Positions 2,190 to 39,600 of a stretch of DNA of 64,000 nucleotides are shown here, in pieces. Origin of the DNA: Thalia democratica (lineage: Eukaryota); the NCBI GenBank assembly GCA_965202585.1, contig OZ241828.1, forward strand, positions 57,908,001-57,972,000, in the 5' to 3' direction. The notes below the pieces were generated by a model. The model saw nothing but the letters and a program-made list of their open reading frames with translations, was not told the origin of the DNA and ran no database searches. The stretch's first letter is position 1, and every line of letters starts with the position of its first letter. The position numbers and the translations under genes were made by a program.

Positions 2190-3593
2190 TTTTTAAATAA
2201 AAAGTGTGAGTTATCTTTAAAGTTTCTTTTTGAGCATTAAAAAAATGCTGTAAAGTTTTTACACCATAATATAGTTAATTACGTTTTTTTTTTTGTAAAA
2301 TATAAAATGTCGTGAGCAGTCCAAAACGCTTAAAAAAGATAAGTTTTAGTAATGTTAAATAGTTTTTCTTGAAACAATAAAAGTCTACTTTTTTATTAAA
2401 GTTTTGCTTTATTTTTTTTTATTCATTGCTTACTTATCTAAAGTTATAAAGCTTACATAAAGATACTACATAATTTAAAAAAAAAAAGCTTATTATTAAA
2501 GTTATTAATCACAAATTAAGGTGATTATCAGAACAATTTAATTATAAAAAAATATTTCGATTGTCAAACATTTTTAAGGTAATAATTATTTTCCGTGAAT
2601 TTCTATTATTAGCAGAAAAACTAAGTCTTTGGTATTGTAAATGTTTATAGTTTATGATACCAAGGAAAAATTTCTAAAATGCATAAAAATCTAAAATATT
2701 TTGTACAGCATCTTATTGTAAGTATAGTTATCGTCGTTAAAAGCTTCAAATTCCAGTTAAAACGTTTTCACACATTAATAATAGGGAAATTGCTGAGTTA
2801 TTACTGCAAAAAATACTAATTATGTAATTTGAATCTAGGGTAGCATAGGTAGAGTTAACGCAAAATAATCTAACCTTAGACGATCCTAAGTCTCTGAAAA
2901 CAGTCAAAGTTTGGTTTTTAAAGTGTAGAAGCTGTAACTTTAACTTCACTCATGAAGACTGAGTATAGAGATAATCATAGCTAAATAAAGATTTAAGTTG
3001 AAACTCAAATGTCATAAAATGAACTACTAGAATTTTAAATGTCAGAATATGGAAAATTTATTTTTTGAAATATTAAACTTTAATAGTCAGCACTTTAATA
3101 GTAGTAAGTTGAATTGTAGAGTTTTATAACTAAATAGAATCGTCAGAAACTTAACTGACATGACGTTACTTGAAATTTCGACATTACAACCGCGCTTTAG
3201 TTTTTTAGGAATTAGATTCATAATTACAATATTCGACAATGCCTCGTATAGGTGTAAAAACACTTCACAATGATAAAGGAAACCAATTTTCACAATATCA
3301 CAAATGTTTTCTTTACCATTCACAATATTAGTTTCCTTTCTACTCATTTGGTTAAAGATTTATTTAGTTAAATGAAAGCACTGCATAGTTGTACGTTGTG
3401 CTCTTTGAGCTTCTACTGTGCAGAGATAAACAGTAGTCGGTGGTTGCGTGTTTACAGTGATACTGTAACCGCTCATAGAGTGGTTACGTTGGGTAAAGGA
3501 CATATTAAGGGGGCAATTAGGGAAAGGTTAAATATTATAACATTATAACTTCACTACTAAAAAATAAGTTATTGTATAAATACTACTTAATAC

Positions 3594-33600: not shown

Positions 33601-36600
33601 TTTGCAGTATACTTGTGTTATTTAATTTCTTTCCATAGCATCCTTTGTTTAACTGACCCTTCATAAAAACATTTATGATAAAAGTAAAACTTACGAAAAG
33701 TACGAAAATCTTAAGTAAAAAGCTATAAGACTATGAAAATATTTTTTACAACTATTATCAAACAACAGTAGTAATCATTCTTTATTTTAGTGTTACATTA
33801 TTCTTGCTTTTTACAAGTTACTTTGCACAATACCTTTTTTTAAACTAAGCTATCTAAGAGTATTTATAATTAAGTTAAAACTAAAAAAAAAGTTTGTAAA
33901 AAGACTATTTTTAATATACAAAAACTTCAAACAACATTTGTACTTATTACTATTTTGTTACTCACTCTTAATTTTGTTCTCCAAATATTCATCCGATATT
34001 TTGAGCATGTCAATTATAGGAAGTCGTTCAGCCAAGTAGCCCACCGGGGTGTACGGTTCCTGCACTTGCGCTATCGGGTAGATTCCGCTCAGTATCTATG
34101 TAAGTACGTATATATTTATAATACAAAAAACAACTAATGCTTGTATTGTTTACTAGAGTTTCAACGTATGAAACGTTTCATCAGAACAATATAAAGCACA
34201 TAGCAAAAAATTTTAATGAATCAAAAAAACACATTATGACGTTTAAAACTAAAACTTAAAACAACTTATGTACAAGTTAACTTATGTTTTGTTTTGCTTT
34301 GTTTTTTCTTATTTATAGTTTTATTTTGTTGCTATTTTTGTTATTGAATAGCGTTTTTTGTTCTTTTTAAACACATAGTTTAGTTGCGAAGACATAGTTG
34401 CTGTCTTTCTTTTCTTTTATTTAGTAATAGTTCTTTTTTTGTTTGTCTGATTTCATACTTTTCCAGGCTAAGTATGTATATAGGTAAAATAAGAATTATC
34501 TATTTTCAACTAAACTTTATATTTGTAAAATATTATTATCTTAATTCACTTTCATATTATTAACCCAGCTCAGTGTCTGCACATTCTTACTTTGTTAAAT
34601 ATTCAAATAATTGAAACATCTAAACAAGCACTAAATACATTTTTTCCAATACTTTGAAAATACATTCCATTAAACAGTTATACTCTTAAAGTTTTAAGAG
34701 ATAATACACTCAGTATCTAAATAAAAGTTAGTTGTCACAAACAGTGTTTGTCTCGTAATAGAAATATTTTATTAAACATTAAACATTTTTATCAATGCTT
34801 TGTTTGTTATTTTATGTCATAAAACAGTACTTCTTAACTTGTAACTTAAGGAGATAGTGCACAACACTTGTTATTTAGAAAATAGAGTTTCACCGAAAAT
34901 GGGTCGTCAGTCAAAAGAAATTTCTAAAATGCTTTGAAAATAAATGGAATGTATTAAGAGTAAAATAAGCTTTAACTAAAAGCAAAACGTTATATTAGAT
35001 ATTAACATAAAAATGATAAAAATTAAACAGTTTAGTAATTTAACTTTCTTACAAACTATTACCGTATCAAAAACCACTGTAAGGACAAGAAATTAAACTG
35101 TATCCATGGTGTATGAATCGATAACCAAAAAGTTTTTACGTACACCTGGTCCATAGACCAAGACTTTATGAATGTTTTTTTTGTATTTTAATAAATAATA
35201 TAAAGAGAGCAAAAAACTAAATGAAAGTATGTTATTCAAATAAACTTATAACTATTACTTATACCATTCCATTTATATACCATTTTACAGAACTCTCTGT
35301 AAATGATAATCTCTTTGGGTAAAAGCCGGTTTCACAAAAATTGAAAATAACAAATAAACGCAGCACCATAAATTGAAAAATTTTTTGTAACAATATTTTA
35401 TATATACTGTCTGCAAGCCTAGTAATTAGAATTTTACAACCTCTGCGCAGCTTTTAAATTTAACAGTCATAAAAAAAAGCATTGTTTTGTATCAAAACCT
35501 GCAGCTGTTTATTTATGAGCGATGGCTTAATAAAGTCTTATAACTAAATATAAATTTTAACTAATATCGAAAAACCTGCATCTGTTAAAGACGAGGTTAA
35601 ATAACTGTACAACTAAATACTGATTAAAGTATGTTGGTCAAAAAAAAACAAACAAACATTTTCATCATTGTAAACCATAACAAAGCATACCTGCATTTGT
35701 TTATCGATGAGTGACGGGAACACGAGTCCGGGTGAATCGCACAACCTGACCGTCTTGGTGAGAAAGTAGGTCTGGTAGTACTTGGTGTGGCCTGGTGTCA
35801 CCGATGTGCTCACCACCTTCTTGCCTATTAGCCCGTTCATAATGGACGATTTGCCCACATTAGGGTGGCCTGTTTGAGTGGGTTAGAATTGTTTATTAAT
35901 AAAAAAAAAAGACAAGCTTTTGCAAATACATTGTACCTTGTTTTTGTAGTTTGTTTATGCACAGTTTAGTTATGGGTTGATAAATTTATTAATTAGTTTT
36001 TTAACATATTAAGTACACGAGTGATATCATTTCCATTCACTTGTTTTACAACAGTTTACCTTTGTAGTAACGGGTGGCCTGTGAGCTTGTGGGTTGATGA
36101 TAAATTAATTGTTTAATAAAATTTTGTGACTAACCAGTTAAATGAACAAATAAAATAATACTTTTCAAATGCACTGTTTCTTTTTTTTACAAAAAAGTTT
36201 ATTTTTGTATTTTTATTTTAAAATACACTGCTACTGAGTAAACTGTGTGAGTTAACCAACAAATATATTAATAATCATTGATTGAAACAAATAATGTTTG
36301 AGTTTAAAAATCTATCAGTAGAATGTCTTAACTGCTTAAAGTTTATTGTCAAACTGTTTTATTTTAGTCTTCATCATTAAATTTAACAAACATTTGGCAT
36401 GATATGCATACACTTGATTTACACCATACAACAGTTTTGCATAGTAATGTCAAAACAAACATTAATACTAATTTTACTTAATAAAAAATAAAATTTGCCA
36501 CAAACCAAAACAAAAGTATATACTATGAAACAAGAAAAAGATTGGTATTATACTGATTAATAAGCATTAACTGATATAAAAAAGTAATCAACAGTTTTTA

Positions 36601-39600
36601 CTAAATGATCAAAGTAAAACATGTGTCAAAAACAAAAATTTGTTTTTTTTATTTTGAAGTCTTGTTAATGAAAACTACCAATTAAAAAGTTCTGCTAGCT
36701 CTGGTACAACTAGATAAAATGTACATTTAAAGATATTTTTTCAGTTTTTATTTTGTTTATTCTCAATGTGCTAGAGATTTTCAAAGTGTGCACAGTACGT
36801 AAATAGTTAGCTGGGCACAAATAAATAATTAGTAGAAAAATAATTTTTAAAAGACCCTTTTCTATCTGAATATGTTTATAAAACAATTTGAAAATTAAAA
36901 AAAAATATTACAGCCATAATTTATATTCATTCGATAAATAAAAATTTCATAAGTACATCGGAAGTTAATTTTGTACTAAAAAAAATTATTTATTTTTTAG
37001 TTTTTATATGAGCTACCTGACACATTTTACAGAGTAACGAAATTCAAAGTATATTTGGACAAATGAGAACCAAAGAGGGTGAATTTAATAGGTTTTGTAT
37101 ATAAGGTGCAAACTAAAAAAAAACTTTTGTTTTTATCTATCTTCCTACAAATCTTTACAGTTTATATAATTTAATTTTTTGATAGTATAGAAATGAATTA
37201 TACACTAGAAAATAACTCTTTGTTAGGAGGATTTTATTCAAAGTAATAGTAAAAAAGTACTGTTAAATAAATGAAATAGAAACTTATTTTAAAAAGGCTA
37301 TTTTTTAATTTTTTTTTCTGTAAAAACTGTCTTCTAGTTCATACTCAAAACTTTCACATAACAGCTTATCTTAATTTCATTAAAAAAAATACCCTAATAA
37401 AACGCTATGGCTTTTACATAACAACTAAATATTAATCATTGCTTTGAGCGAAAGCAACACTCTGCAACGTTTGCATAAAACCTCTACTATAGAAAACTCG
37501 GTGAGCAACAAAACTTCATATATATTTAAACCTTTTTCAAAATTTTATCAAATTAAATCAATTAACGAAATTAAGTTAAACTTTGTAAAATTAATATATC
37601 AATTTTACCACTACAGTGGGGTACTGAAAAAATCAAATGAAAATTATTTATACTTTACCTTATCTTAATTACTATTGATATACAAATAACATTGTTTAAG
37701 ATTAAATTAAACACTAAGTAATCAACCATTTTAAATTAATTTCATAAATATATAACAGTGTATATCAAACCAACCGAGGAATCCAACGGTGAGAACTCCG
37801 TTTTCAAACTTCTGCCTAGTAGTCATATCAAAATCATCTGTTTCTCCGTCCTCGATATTCTTGCCGACATCATCCTGTTTGTGTTCAAATATAAAAGGTT
37901 GATAAATTTAATGTGTAACAAAACTCTGTTTATATCAAACTGGTAGCATTTTTGTATTTAATTTATAAAACTTAATGTAATTTAATATAGAACTTTCCGG
38001 ATATCGAACTGATACCGTTTTTGTATTGAATTACAGCTTTAGACCAACATTATCCTATTTGTGTAGTTATTGAAAACAAATGTAAGGAGTTTATACCAAG
38101 ACTTATGATACATTAAAACAAAGTCTCATTGAAATAAAACTGATAGCATTTTTGTATCAAGTTTCGTAAACAAATGTACTACAAGTTAAGTACTACAAAA
38201 CTATATTCAACATTATACTACTTGTTAAAGTATTCAAAACAAATGTAAGCAATTGATAAAAAAAAATATTGTACATCAAAATAAAATATTGAAACTATCA
38301 AACTGGTTGCGTTTTTGTATTTACTTTAACACACAACAAAACACTAACATCAACATCTTCCTCGTCGACATCCACGTTGTTGAACAGGTTCTTCATGTCC
38401 TTTGATATTTTGTCTTTCCACGACGTCAGGTCAACTTGAAAATGTTGTATGTATGAACTAACGAGTTGCGTTTTTATGTTGATAATGTTTGGATTTTAAT
38501 AAAGTAAAATGATAAAAAATATGTTATTTTTTGCTTTGTAAAAACTGTAACTGGCTTTTATCATAAAACTACAAAAATCAAAACATTGATGACCATTTTA
38601 TAAATTTATAGAATTGTGTTATAAAGTTCAACAACATAAGATCTAAAGTATGTAAACCTGAGCATTTTAAAACTTATTTTAAAAAACTAATGAGTTAAGG
38701 TCATAAACAAAAGATCTACTTAAGAGCGCAGTGGGCTGGCAAGTGGCTGTGACTTTTTAATTGACTAAAAAAGGCTAATAATTCAAAAAATGACAAATAT
38801 TTACATTAGCAGCAATTAAAAATAAGTTGCTGCCACCGGTAAAAAACAACTTTTTTCATCAAGTTACTCTTATTTAGTATATTTTTAGGCATTTTTAACA
38901 GGTTACGACTTTCTTTTAAGCCTTTTTGTGATTTCAAAGTACTTAAAAGGTTTATATGTGATAAGTTTAATAGGTTACTTTATGATATTAGAACTGATAT
39001 TGAAAATGGGACTAATTTGTTAAAATGTATCCCCATCTTTCTCGAGTTTCAAGCAAACATTTTAAGACTTTCTCAGTTTAAGTTTTTAATCTTTTTAACA
39101 AAGTATCAGTTGAAATTCTATTATTTATTAAAAACTTCAAGTTAAAAGTATATTTATGATATAAACTTGGTGTAAACCTTTTTTATCATTTTTATAATTC
39201 CCTTGGAGAAACCATTTCAAATCATGTAAGGGACATTTACTAAAAAAATGGAGTCCATAGTTTTTAAACTTAGTACTCACAGGCTAGGTGGTAAATTTTT
39301 ATTGCCATAGTCTGTTTATTGTTGTTTAAATTTCATGAATTAAAAAAAGTAACTTTTAGCTGGGCAAAAAATCTAGTACAGAACGTGTTACCCCTTCAAC
39401 AGTCTTTATTTATGCATGCATATAATAGTATTAGTATATTATAAGAGTTACATTGTCAAAGCGTTATTATCATTTTCTTGAACTTTAAATGATTAAGCAT
39501 AAATTTTCAATAAAAGATTAACTTATAAGGGAGCAATGTTTTGTTCACATCTCTACGAAAAACTGTTTAGCTCATATTACTACATCCTCTATTTAATTAC

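What the first reader, a model, noticed from the sequence alone, without database searches (positions are those of the whole stretch)
34096..34191. Intact sense-strand hammerhead ribozyme 55 nt upstream of a GNL1 3' splice site
Seen: complete core (CUGAUGA, GAAA, GUA), perfect 5-bp stem II and 7-bp stem I, on the transcribed strand of a housekeeping GTPase; predicted cut at 34151/34150 and acceptor at 34096. No retroelement ORF is adjacent. Established: minimal type I hammerheads with tiny stem III occur in Penelope pseudo-LTRs and retrozymes and often cleave well only as dimers; a few intronic hammerheads have been domesticated in animals. Inference: cleavage could compete with splicing of intron 5 and tune GNL1 output, or it is a tolerated recent solo pLTR.
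Basis: partly seen in the sequence, partly recalled or inferred. Interest (0 to 1): 0.7.

Follow-up and report, generated by a model that had tools for sequence, protein, structure and literature searches.

The report
Penelope-like retroelement hammerhead in GTPase intron
The hammerhead-ribozyme motif is really there, but it is the standard 3'-end motif of a very abundant Penelope-like jumping gene; one old, truncated copy landed just upstream of the splice site, and nothing shows that the host gene uses it.

Summary
The motif is confirmed base for base. On the minus strand at 34191-34144 it has a 7-bp stem I, CUGAUGA, a 5-bp stem II, GAAA, a 2-bp helix III and GUA. The predicted cut is at 34151/34150, 55 nt before the in-frame acceptor at 34096.

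It is not a unique or domesticated element. It lies in a roughly 360-bp repeat copy (about 34470-34112) flanked by a 14-bp target-site duplication. The family has at least 532 candidate copies, with one shared 3' end and staggered 5' ends. [quoted passage not shown] A 43-47% identical relative of that endonuclease folds like I-TevI (Z 9.4). The motifs fit the published Hydra clade of Penelope-like elements, which carry 3' hammerheads.

The window copy is old (11.6% diverged), is the only hammerhead in the 64 kb, and has a weak helix III. Its unbroken core and stems are expected by chance in a few of so many copies.

Rfam does not recognise this family's motif, which has A10.1-U11.1 instead of G-C, so catalytic competence is unproven. 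No read evidence could be obtained.

Verdict: a passenger retroelement relic, a new member of a known kind, of low interest. The scan had already noted Penelope-linked hammerheads elsewhere in this genome.

The parts
34144..34191 (-). Minimal type I hammerhead-like motif: stem I 34191-34185 with 34150-34144; CUGAUGA 34184-34178; stem II 34177-34173 with 34167-34163; GAAA 34162-34159; helix III and loop 34158-34152; A17 at 34151. Predicted cut 34151/34150.
   Evidence: Read directly. Pattern and descriptor scans. The same motif is in the family majority.
34112..34470 (-). 5'-truncated copy of a Penelope-like (Hydra-clade-like) retroelement, about 360 bp: the last ~30 decayed codons of its ORF plus ~260 nt of 3' UTR. 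Ends are uncertain by 2-3 nt because they overlap the target duplication.
   Evidence: At least 532 candidate copies at 81-89% identity. Shared 3' end and staggered 5' ends. 11.6% diverged from the family majority.
34380..34470 (-). Decayed C-terminal coding remnant of the element's endonuclease (…SLEKYEIRQTKKELLLNKRKE…), matching the family's CxLCxxEK…LNxRxE tail.
   Evidence: Translation. Family consensus of 70 homologues.
34469..34482 (-). Upstream copy of the 14-bp target-site duplication, TATATACATACTTA. Its last 2 nt are shared with the element's first bases.
34101..34114 (-). Downstream copy of the target-site duplication, TATATACGTACTTA (1 mismatch). It ends 5 nt before the acceptor.
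34112..34150 (-). ~40-nt U-rich element tail downstream of the predicted cut, up to the element's 3' end. It now occupies the polypyrimidine/branch-point zone of intron 5.
   Evidence: Its role in splicing is inference only.
34096..35690 (-). Host intron 5 (donor GT 35690-35689, acceptor AG 34097-34096) of a YlqF/YawG-family GTPase gene.
   Evidence: In-frame exon junction. MMR_HSR1 hit. LSG1-like PDB hits.
33968..34095 (-). Host exon 6 (ILSGIYPIAQVQEPYTPVGYLAERLP…).

Best explanation
The motif is the 3'-UTR hammerhead of a Penelope-like retroelement. The element encodes a reverse-transcriptase-like protein with a C-terminal GIY-YIG endonuclease, and its features fit the Hydra clade.

One copy was inserted by target-primed reverse transcription into intron 5 of the GTPase gene, in the sense orientation. 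It was 5'-truncated to about 360 bp and made a 14-bp target duplication that ends 5 nt before the acceptor. It has since drifted 11.6% from the family majority.

In the element's own life cycle the hammerhead presumably processes, or helps the element's protein handle, the element RNA. It would act as a dimer between tandem or paired copies, as described for Penelope-like elements.

In this intron it is a lone monomer with a 2-bp helix III, so it is expected to cleave little or not at all. It is a passenger: splicing goes on because the U-rich tail of the element can stand in for the displaced polypyrimidine tract.

Shown: the motif, the repeat membership, the truncation pattern, the target duplication, the coding remnant and the endonuclease fold. 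Inferred: the mechanism of insertion, the role in the element, the inactivity in the intron and the tail's role in splicing.
For: - **Repeat membership.** At least 532 candidates; 40 scored at 81-89% identity.
- **Insertion mode.** Copies share one 3' end and have 5' ends anywhere along the element. Truncated copies carry 12-18-bp target duplications, including the window copy.
- **The family carries the motif.** The family majority has the same hammerhead, with loop II GUUAA.
- **Coding remnant.** Longer copies run into a decayed ORF with FDITKFYPS, YRDDGL, SNHP…, IIYFNPPFS, CNCRKEKCPLNNNC and IIYQATI…YAGSTSTTFKNRYSNHK.
- **Endonuclease.** That ORF is 43-47% identical (E 5e-23 and 3e-30) to an intact 242-aa ORF. 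The model of that ORF (pLDDT 80) matches I-TevI at Z 9.4, T4 EndoII at Z 8.0 and UvrC at Z 6.2-6.4.
- **Clade motifs.** Homologues of about 700 aa show ADKT, an RxRW motif, CxCX5C, and CxxC…E…N…CxH. These are the diagnostic motifs described for the Hydra clade, which also has (TA)n targets and 3' hammerheads (PMC8557442).
- **Intactness needs no selection.** Only 27 exact copies of the core plus stem II exist, and the window's loop is unique. At 11.6% divergence, the chance of no hit in 39 constrained positions is about 0.008, so a few such copies are expected among at least 532.
- **No dimer partner.** There is no second hammerhead in the window. The self-duplex energy of helix III is -3.3 kcal/mol, against -12.1 and -9.7 for the genome's two other hammerhead types.
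- **Literature.** Tiny-helix-III hammerheads of Penelope-like elements cleave poorly and only as dimers (PMC4209133).
Against:
- Pfam does not recognise the RT part: RVT_1 scores only 13.9 bits, E 0.045, and there are no hits in full-length homologues. The RT assignment therefore rests on motifs.
- No pseudo-LTR or tandem arrangement was seen for this family in the loci held.
- All 39 core and stem positions of the window copy are unchanged, while 3 of 5 loop-II bases changed. That pattern would also fit constraint.
- Inactivity in the intron is predicted, not measured.
Confidence: 0.85

Rival explanations
1. Co-opted regulator. The retroelement-derived hammerhead cleaves the GTPase pre-mRNA between the 5' splice site and the branch point. 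It competes with splicing of intron 5 and so sets the output of the gene.
For: - Sense orientation, 55 nt from the acceptor.
- Every core and stem position is intact although the copy is 11.6% diverged, and the changes fall in the loops.
- A few intronic hammerheads are conserved in amniotes and are thought to act in mRNA biogenesis (PMC7229834, introduction).
Against: - It is one of hundreds of copies, of which a few intact ones are expected by chance.
- Helix III is 2 bp, with no partner within 64 kb and a weak dimer helix.
- The private loop-II changes create a competing hairpin that buries GAAA: MFE -8.1 against -3.2 kcal/mol for the active fold.
- A10.1-U11.1 replaces the conserved G-C, and Rfam gives no hit.
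- Orthologous conservation was not tested.
Confidence: 0.04
2. Dead or repurposed motif. Even in the parent element this sequence no longer works as a ribozyme. It is a decayed hammerhead, kept if at all as a structured 3' signal for the element's protein, so cleavage is irrelevant everywhere. This reading is compatible with the copy being a passenger.
For: - Neither the family majority nor the window copy gets a Hammerhead_1 hit at E<=10. Another Penelope-linked hammerhead in the same genome scores 24.3 bits and the satellite ones 33-43 bits.
- A10.1-U11.1 and GUA stand where G10.1-C11.1 is reported as highly conserved (PMC4209133).
- Helix III is not a clean palindrome.
- Within the family there is no covariation above shuffles.
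- For the anole element, catalytic hammerhead mutants did not affect insertion in vitro (PMC11167929).
Against: - All 11 strictly conserved core nucleotides, U16.1-H17 and all three helices are present in the family ancestor. That is far beyond chance for one ~2.5-kb element.
- The position, in the 3' region of a Penelope-like element about 40 nt from its end, is where functional hammerheads of this class sit.
- The missing covariation is what neutral decay of dead copies predicts, so it says nothing about the master copy.
Confidence: 0.25
3. Chance look-alike. An AT-rich intron happens to contain CUGAUGA…GAAA…GUA with pairing flanks.
For: The descriptor gives about 0.005 hits per shuffled 64-kb window, so tens of chance hits are expected in an 801-Mb genome. 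CUGAUGA also reads as a box C, which explains the weak snoRNA hits.
Against: The motif is inherited from a repeat family whose majority sequence carries it. That family is a Penelope-like element, a class known to carry hammerheads.
Confidence: 0.01

Closest known systems
Hammerheads in the 3' ends and pseudo-LTRs of Penelope-like elements, especially the Hydra clade (Cervera & De la Peña 2014, PMC4209133; Craig et al. 2021, PMC8557442)
   Same: - Type I topology, tiny helix III and near-palindromic loop 3.
- Position near the 3' end of an element with a C-terminal GIY-YIG.
- Mostly dispersed, 5'-truncated single copies.
- AT/TA-rich target sites.
- Protein motifs ADKT, RxRW, CxCX5C and CxxC…CxH, with no CCHH.
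   Different: - A10.1-U11.1 instead of the conserved G10.1-C11.1.
- GUA rather than GUC.
- No unpaired base between A9 and 10.1.
- No Rfam hit.
- No pseudo-LTR or tandem arrangement seen for this family in the loci read.
Animal non-LTR retrozymes and hammerhead satellites (PMC7229834; preprint 10.64898/2026.07.22.740005)
   Same: - Type I hammerhead carried by a retroelement-related repeat, probably mobilised by Penelope-like enzymes.
- The same genome holds a classical 328-bp example.
   Different: - This family is not tandem and not 150-450 bp; it carries coding remnants.
- No sequence similarity to the 328-bp units.
- Its hammerhead lacks the GUCC/GGAC stem II and the UAAAUA loop.
Conserved intronic hammerheads of amniotes (HH9/HH10 class; cited in PMC7229834 and PMC6155905)
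   Same: A sense-strand hammerhead inside an intron of a protein-coding gene.
   Different: Those are single-copy, conserved across species and stable as monomers. This one is a copy of a repeat, has a 2-bp helix III, and its conservation is untested.
Schistosome Sm-alpha SINE-like hammerhead repeats (Ferbeyre et al. 1998, as cited in PMC4209133)
   Same: A dispersed, high-copy short repeat with a type I hammerhead that works as a dimer.
   Different: Sm-alpha is a short non-coding unit with a canonical G10.1-C11.1 hammerhead. Here the short copies are truncations of a coding element.

Membership tests
Hammerhead ribozyme, type I (Rfam RF00163) | Conserved core C3-U4-G5-A6-N7-G8-A9, G12-A13-A14, U16.1-H17 | tested here: met
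   CUGAUGA, GAAA and UA are all present, in the family majority as well.
Hammerhead ribozyme, type I (Rfam RF00163) | Three helices around the core, with helix I open-ended | tested here: met
   Stem I 7 bp, stem II 5 bp, helix III 2 bp. 90% of cells are paired over 34 distinct copies.
Hammerhead ribozyme, type I (Rfam RF00163) | G10.1-C11.1 closing pair, highly conserved in natural hammerheads | tested here: not met
   A10.1-U11.1 in the window and in 28 of 34 distinct copies. The conservation is stated in PMC4209133.
Hammerhead ribozyme, type I (Rfam RF00163) | Score at or above Rfam's gathering threshold (34 bits) | tested here: not met
   No hit at gathering score or at E<=10. The best is 11.1 bits to Hammerhead_3. 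Controls: 24.3 bits for another Penelope-linked hammerhead and 33-43 bits for the satellite.
Hammerhead ribozyme, type I (Rfam RF00163) | Mg2+-dependent self-cleavage after H17 | not testable with these tools
   Needs a bench assay. Read mapping was not possible.
Penelope-like element, Hydra clade (PMC8557442) | C-terminal GIY-YIG endonuclease | tested here: met
   The decayed ORF of family copies is 43-47% identical to an intact ORF. The model of that ORF matches I-TevI at Z 9.4, rmsd 2.6 Å, 90 of 92 residues. Pfam is blind or sub-threshold.
Penelope-like element, Hydra clade (PMC8557442) | Reverse transcriptase upstream of the endonuclease in a single ORF | tested here: inconclusive
   Motifs FDIxxFYPSI, GLYRDDGL and VDFLDV occur in ~700-aa homologues and in local copies. 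RVT_1 reaches only E 0.045, and the best PDB profile hit is a retron-type RT at E 0.23.
Penelope-like element, Hydra clade (PMC8557442) | DKT in place of DKG, an RWK-type N-terminal motif, a CxCX5C linker, no CCHH, and CxxC and CxH around the conserved E and N | tested here: met
   ADKT and RxRW in alignment A4. CNCRxKxxC, CxLC…E…N…CRH and no CCHH in A3. Local decayed copies read SDKS and RWR.
Penelope-like element, Hydra clade (PMC8557442) | Hammerhead near the 3' end | tested here: met
   The motif lies about 40 nt from the shared 3' end in all copies.
Penelope-like element, Hydra clade (PMC8557442) | 5' truncation, target-site duplication, (TA)n-type targets | tested here: met
   Staggered 5' ends. 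12-18-bp duplications and TA-rich flanks. The (TA)n preference is only qualitative.
Penelope-like element, Hydra clade (PMC8557442) | Partial tandem (pseudo-LTR) or inverted-pair arrangement | tested here: inconclusive
   Not seen in the loci held, which reach only 1.5 kb upstream. Further DNA could not be fetched.
Animal non-LTR retrozyme | Head-to-tail tandem units of 150-450 bp, each with a hammerhead | tested here: not met
   Single dispersed copies with coding remnants. No similarity to the genome's 328-bp arrays.
Domesticated intronic hammerhead | Single-copy locus conserved at the orthologous site across species | tested here: not met
   It is a copy of a repeat with at least 532 candidates. 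Orthologous presence could not be tested.

The most novel reading that the evidence does not exclude
The insertion has been partly co-opted. The element's U-rich tail now supplies the polypyrimidine tract and branch point for the intron-5 acceptor. The still-intact hammerhead just upstream cleaves a fraction of pre-mRNAs, alone or in trans with the many other transcripts of the family. That would couple the output of a ribosome-biogenesis GTPase to retroelement RNA levels.
Probability: 0.03. Interest if true: 0.6.

Novelty: new member of a known kind. Interest (0 to 1): 0.2.

Why it matters
Mainly as a caution. An 'intact' ribozyme motif next to a splice site looks like regulation, but in a genome with hundreds to thousands of Penelope-like 3' ends a few intact copies in introns are expected.

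Three smaller points remain:
- This abundant Hydra-clade-like family carries an atypical hammerhead (A10.1-U11.1, GUA, weak helix III) that Rfam misses. It is a cheap test case for how far a hammerhead can drift and still work.
- The protein family is very large (8320 cluster representatives) yet invisible to Pfam.
- The insertion sits 5-19 nt from an acceptor of a housekeeping gene, so it is a natural experiment on how a retroelement tail can replace a polypyrimidine tract.

Tried and rejected
**Dead ends**
- **Read evidence.** Expression, cleavage ends, splicing and presence of the insertion in 'organism B' (run X3) therefore stay untested. No letters of 36969-37005 were sent to any search tool afterwards. 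Only local scripts read the whole window file.
- **Protein-family searches.** Pfam and NCBIfam gave nothing significant on the element's ORF pieces or on full-length homologues.
- **PDB searches.** Profile searches were not significant. The Foldseek PDB search alone was weak, E 0.15; the VIA second look settled the fold.
- **Supplements.** Those of PMC8557442 are not held.

**Readings considered and rejected**
- **tRNA- or 5S-derived SINE.** This was my first reading. There is no tRNA or Rfam head, and copies keep extending upstream into coding sequence.
- **Relative of the 328-bp retrozyme.** No similarity.
- **3' end of the canonical Penelope/Poseidon-like elements found through Pfam GIY-YIG.** No similarity and no hammerhead in 30 loci.
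- **C/D-box snoRNA.** The hits (snR78 at 18.6 bits, SNORD49) rest on UGAUGA alone.
- **A diverged subfamily with the window's loop.** None exists within 1 mismatch.
- **Selection on the hammerhead within the family.** The motif is no better conserved than the rest of the 3' UTR in copies chosen without regard to it, and covariation is not above shuffles.

**Left unverified.** The name GNL1 was checked only to family level. I ran no further search on it, because it does not change the verdict.
Full report
**1. The observation**

On the minus strand the sequence reads UAUUGUU-CUGAUGA-AACGU-uucau-ACGUU-GAAA-C-ucua-G-UA|AACAAUA, spanning 34191-34144.
- All strictly conserved hammerhead core positions are present.
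- Stem I has 7 pairs, stem II has 5, and helix III has 2 (A15.1-U16.1 and C15.2-G16.2) around a 4-nt loop.
- The predicted cut is 34151/34150.
- The acceptor AG is at 34097-34096, 55 nt downstream.
- Exon 5 (…LVFPSLIDKQMQ, donor GT 35690-35689) joins in frame to exon 6 (ILSGIYPIAQVQEPY…).

The linear pattern is expected 0.01 times per shuffled window. A descriptor of my own that also demands the helices is expected 0.005 times per window, and it finds only this site in the 64 kb.

The host is a YlqF/YawG-family GTPase. The evidence is MMR_HSR1 at 8.8e-9, LSG1 as the nearest solved relative at 1e-19, and Atlas neighbours NGP1, LSG1, GNL3L and GNL1. 'GNL1' is plausible but was not verified.

**2. 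It is a copy of a repeat**

A 165-nt query around the motif finds at least 532 candidates in the window's own 801-Mb assembly. Forty were scored, at 81-89% identity.

Similarity in the window runs from about 34470 to 34112.
- All copies share one 3' end (…UUUUUUGUAUUAUAAAUAU, about 40 nt past the predicted cut).
- Their 5' ends fall anywhere along the element.
- 5'-truncated copies have target-site duplications of 12-18 bp. The window copy has TATATAC(A/G)TACTTA at 34482-34469 and 34114-34101.

This is the signature of target-primed reverse transcription.

**3. What the repeat is**

I first read it as a SINE. No tRNA or Rfam head was found, and each longer copy extended the homology further upstream, into decayed coding sequence.

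Reading along the element, the remnants are:
- FDITKFYPS…
- GIYRDDGLAV…
- SNHPNQILKQLPITINKRLNNLSSN…
- RKIIYFNPPFS…
- CNCRKEKCPLNNNC
- NIIYQATI…KFYAGSTSTTFKNRYSNHK…ELSNYIWELK…
- CxLCxLEK…LLNKR…

About 260 nt of 3' UTR with the hammerhead follow. The window copy starts inside the last ~30 codons (…SLEKYEIRQTKKELLLNKRKE…).

ORF pieces of this type have 2312-3578 candidates in the genome, some in open frames of 600-720 aa.

Pfam is nearly blind to the family, so I tested the fold instead:
- An intact 242-aa C-terminal ORF from a sister family (L099, minus strand) is 43-47% identical to the decayed ORF of our family (E 5e-23 and 3e-30).
- It has 8320 homologues at E<=1e-3 among 1.84 billion cluster representatives. 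Full-length ones are about 700 aa and carry this domain at the C-terminus.
- With a 70-sequence alignment the model reaches pLDDT 80.
- Residues 116-228 match the GIY-YIG catalytic domain of I-TevI at Z 9.4 (rmsd 2.6 Å, 90 of 92 residues).
- T4 EndoII matches at Z 8.0 and UvrC at Z 6.2-6.4. The first hit outside the GIY-YIG nucleases is at Z 3.6.

The alignments show ADKT, RxRW, FDIxxFYPSI, GLYRDDGL, a CxCX5C linker, no CCHH, and CxxC…E…N…CxH. These are the features Craig et al. give for the Hydra clade of Penelope-like elements. That clade also has short elements, (TA)n targets and readily detected hammerheads (PMC8557442, section 11).

The RT assignment itself rests on motifs only: RVT_1 at E 0.045 and a retron-type RT at E 0.23.

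**4. Is the hammerhead a family feature or a property of this locus?**

The family majority carries the same motif, with loop II GUUAA and loop III UUA or UUUA.
- Genome-wide, only 27 sites keep CTGATGAAACGT-N5-ACGTTGAAAC exactly.
- The window's loop (UUCAU) is unique within 1 mismatch.
- The window copy is 11.6% diverged from the majority (41 of 353 aligned bases, plus indels). That puts it among the oldest of 33 copies, so it is not recent.

With that divergence the chance of no change in the 39 core and stem positions is about 0.008.

Two further checks point the same way:
- In copies chosen without regard to the motif, the hammerhead is no better conserved than the rest of the 3' UTR. In those 13 aligned copies, 3 still pass my descriptor.
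- Within-family covariation is not above shuffles: 3 doubly changed cells against 1.4 ± 1.0, with 63 of 500 shuffles as high.

So the copies decay neutrally. The case that the ancestor was a real hammerhead rests on the complete core and helices, and on its position in a class of element known to carry hammerheads.

A structurally equivalent hammerhead with a different sequence (UUUGAAG-CUGAUGA-GUGA-auag-UCAC-GAAA-CUCGAG-UC|CUUUGAG) occurs in other Penelope-like fragments of this genome: L050:383-413 and L098/L099:1837-1867.

**5. Would it cleave here?**

The points against are:
- Rfam gives nothing at gathering score or at E<=10 in 701 nt.
- In a 66-nt search the best hit is 11.1 bits to Hammerhead_3, and the family majority does no better.
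- As controls, the other Penelope-linked hammerhead scores 24.3 bits and the 328-bp satellite hammerheads 33-43 bits.
- The departures are A10.1-U11.1 where G-C is 'highly conserved' (PMC4209133), GUA, and a helix III that is not a clean palindrome.
- The self-duplex of helix III, which such motifs need in order to act as dimers, is -3.3 kcal/mol for the window and -3.8 for the family. The two other types give -12.1 and -9.7.
- The window's private loop-II changes favour a hairpin that sequesters GAAA: MFE -8.1 against -3.2 kcal/mol for the active fold.
- No second hammerhead lies within 64 kb.

Published assays found no cleavage by single minimal hammerheads of Penelope-like elements, and low cleavage by dimers (PMC4209133). 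For the anole element, cleavage needed the element's protein and was dispensable for insertion in vitro (PMC11167929).

These are predictions and analogies, not measurements.

**6. Geometry at the splice site (noticed, not tested)**

The downstream target duplication ends 5 nt before the acceptor. The former pyrimidine stretch (34497-34483) is now about 375 nt upstream, in front of a possible cryptic AG at the element's 5' junction (34469-34468). The element's U-rich tail (34133-34115) now lies 19-37 nt from the acceptor.

The gene looks intact, so the tail presumably serves as the polypyrimidine tract and branch region.

**7. What could not be done**

There is therefore no evidence on expression, ends, splicing or presence of the insertion in the relative that holds 43% of the words.

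**8. Verdict**

The 'tolerated solo pLTR' reading is supported in kind, but the copy is old rather than recent. The regulatory reading is unsupported but not formally excluded.

This is a new member of a known kind: a hammerhead at the 3' end of a Penelope-like element, seen here as a truncated intronic copy.

Earlier notes of the scan on this genome point the same way: 328-bp retrozymes with Penelope-style scars, and minimal hammerheads next to GIY-YIG remnants.

Noticed in passing
window 34101-34133 and 34468-34497 (minus strand): The retroelement landed 5-19 nt upstream of the intron-5 acceptor. The old pyrimidine tract is displaced about 375 nt and now precedes a possible cryptic AG at the element's 5' junction (34469-34468). 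The element's U-rich tail sits where the polypyrimidine tract and branch point should be.
   Followed up: partly
L050:383-413; L098:1837-1867; L099:1837-1867: A second hammerhead type: stem II GUGA/UCAC, palindromic helix III CUCGAG, GUC cut. It scores 24.3 bits on Rfam Hammerhead_1. It follows a CGKCLLC-like coding remnant and ends in a (TA)n run, so it is probably the 3' end of another Penelope-like family.
   Followed up: partly
G000 C1:105.48-105.55 Mb and contig C73 (loci L011-L030): Long arrays of a ~328-bp repeat. Each unit has a canonical type I hammerhead (CUGAUGAGUCCUAAAUAGGACGAAACCGGUC, 33-43 bits). This is a classical non-LTR retrozyme or satellite, unrelated in sequence to the family studied here.
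   Followed up: partly
Proteins P0001-P0150; loci L094-L101: The Hydra-clade-like ORF family is very large: 8320 cluster representatives at E<=1e-3, and thousands of candidates in this genome. Pfam detects neither its RT nor, above threshold, its GIY-YIG domain.
   Followed up: yes
L007:565-655: A near-perfect ~90-nt hairpin that draws sub-threshold hits from many miRNA families. It is probably a MITE-like palindrome.
   Followed up: no
G000 pairs such as C6:71392237/71393162, C1:110353667/110355667 and C5:59770618/59774032: Canonical Penelope/Poseidon-like ORFs (RT plus a GIY-YIG that Pfam does detect; see L065 and L088) often lie in head-to-head inverted pairs 1-3 kb apart, the arrangement described for Penelope-like elements.
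   Followed up: no
   Followed up: no
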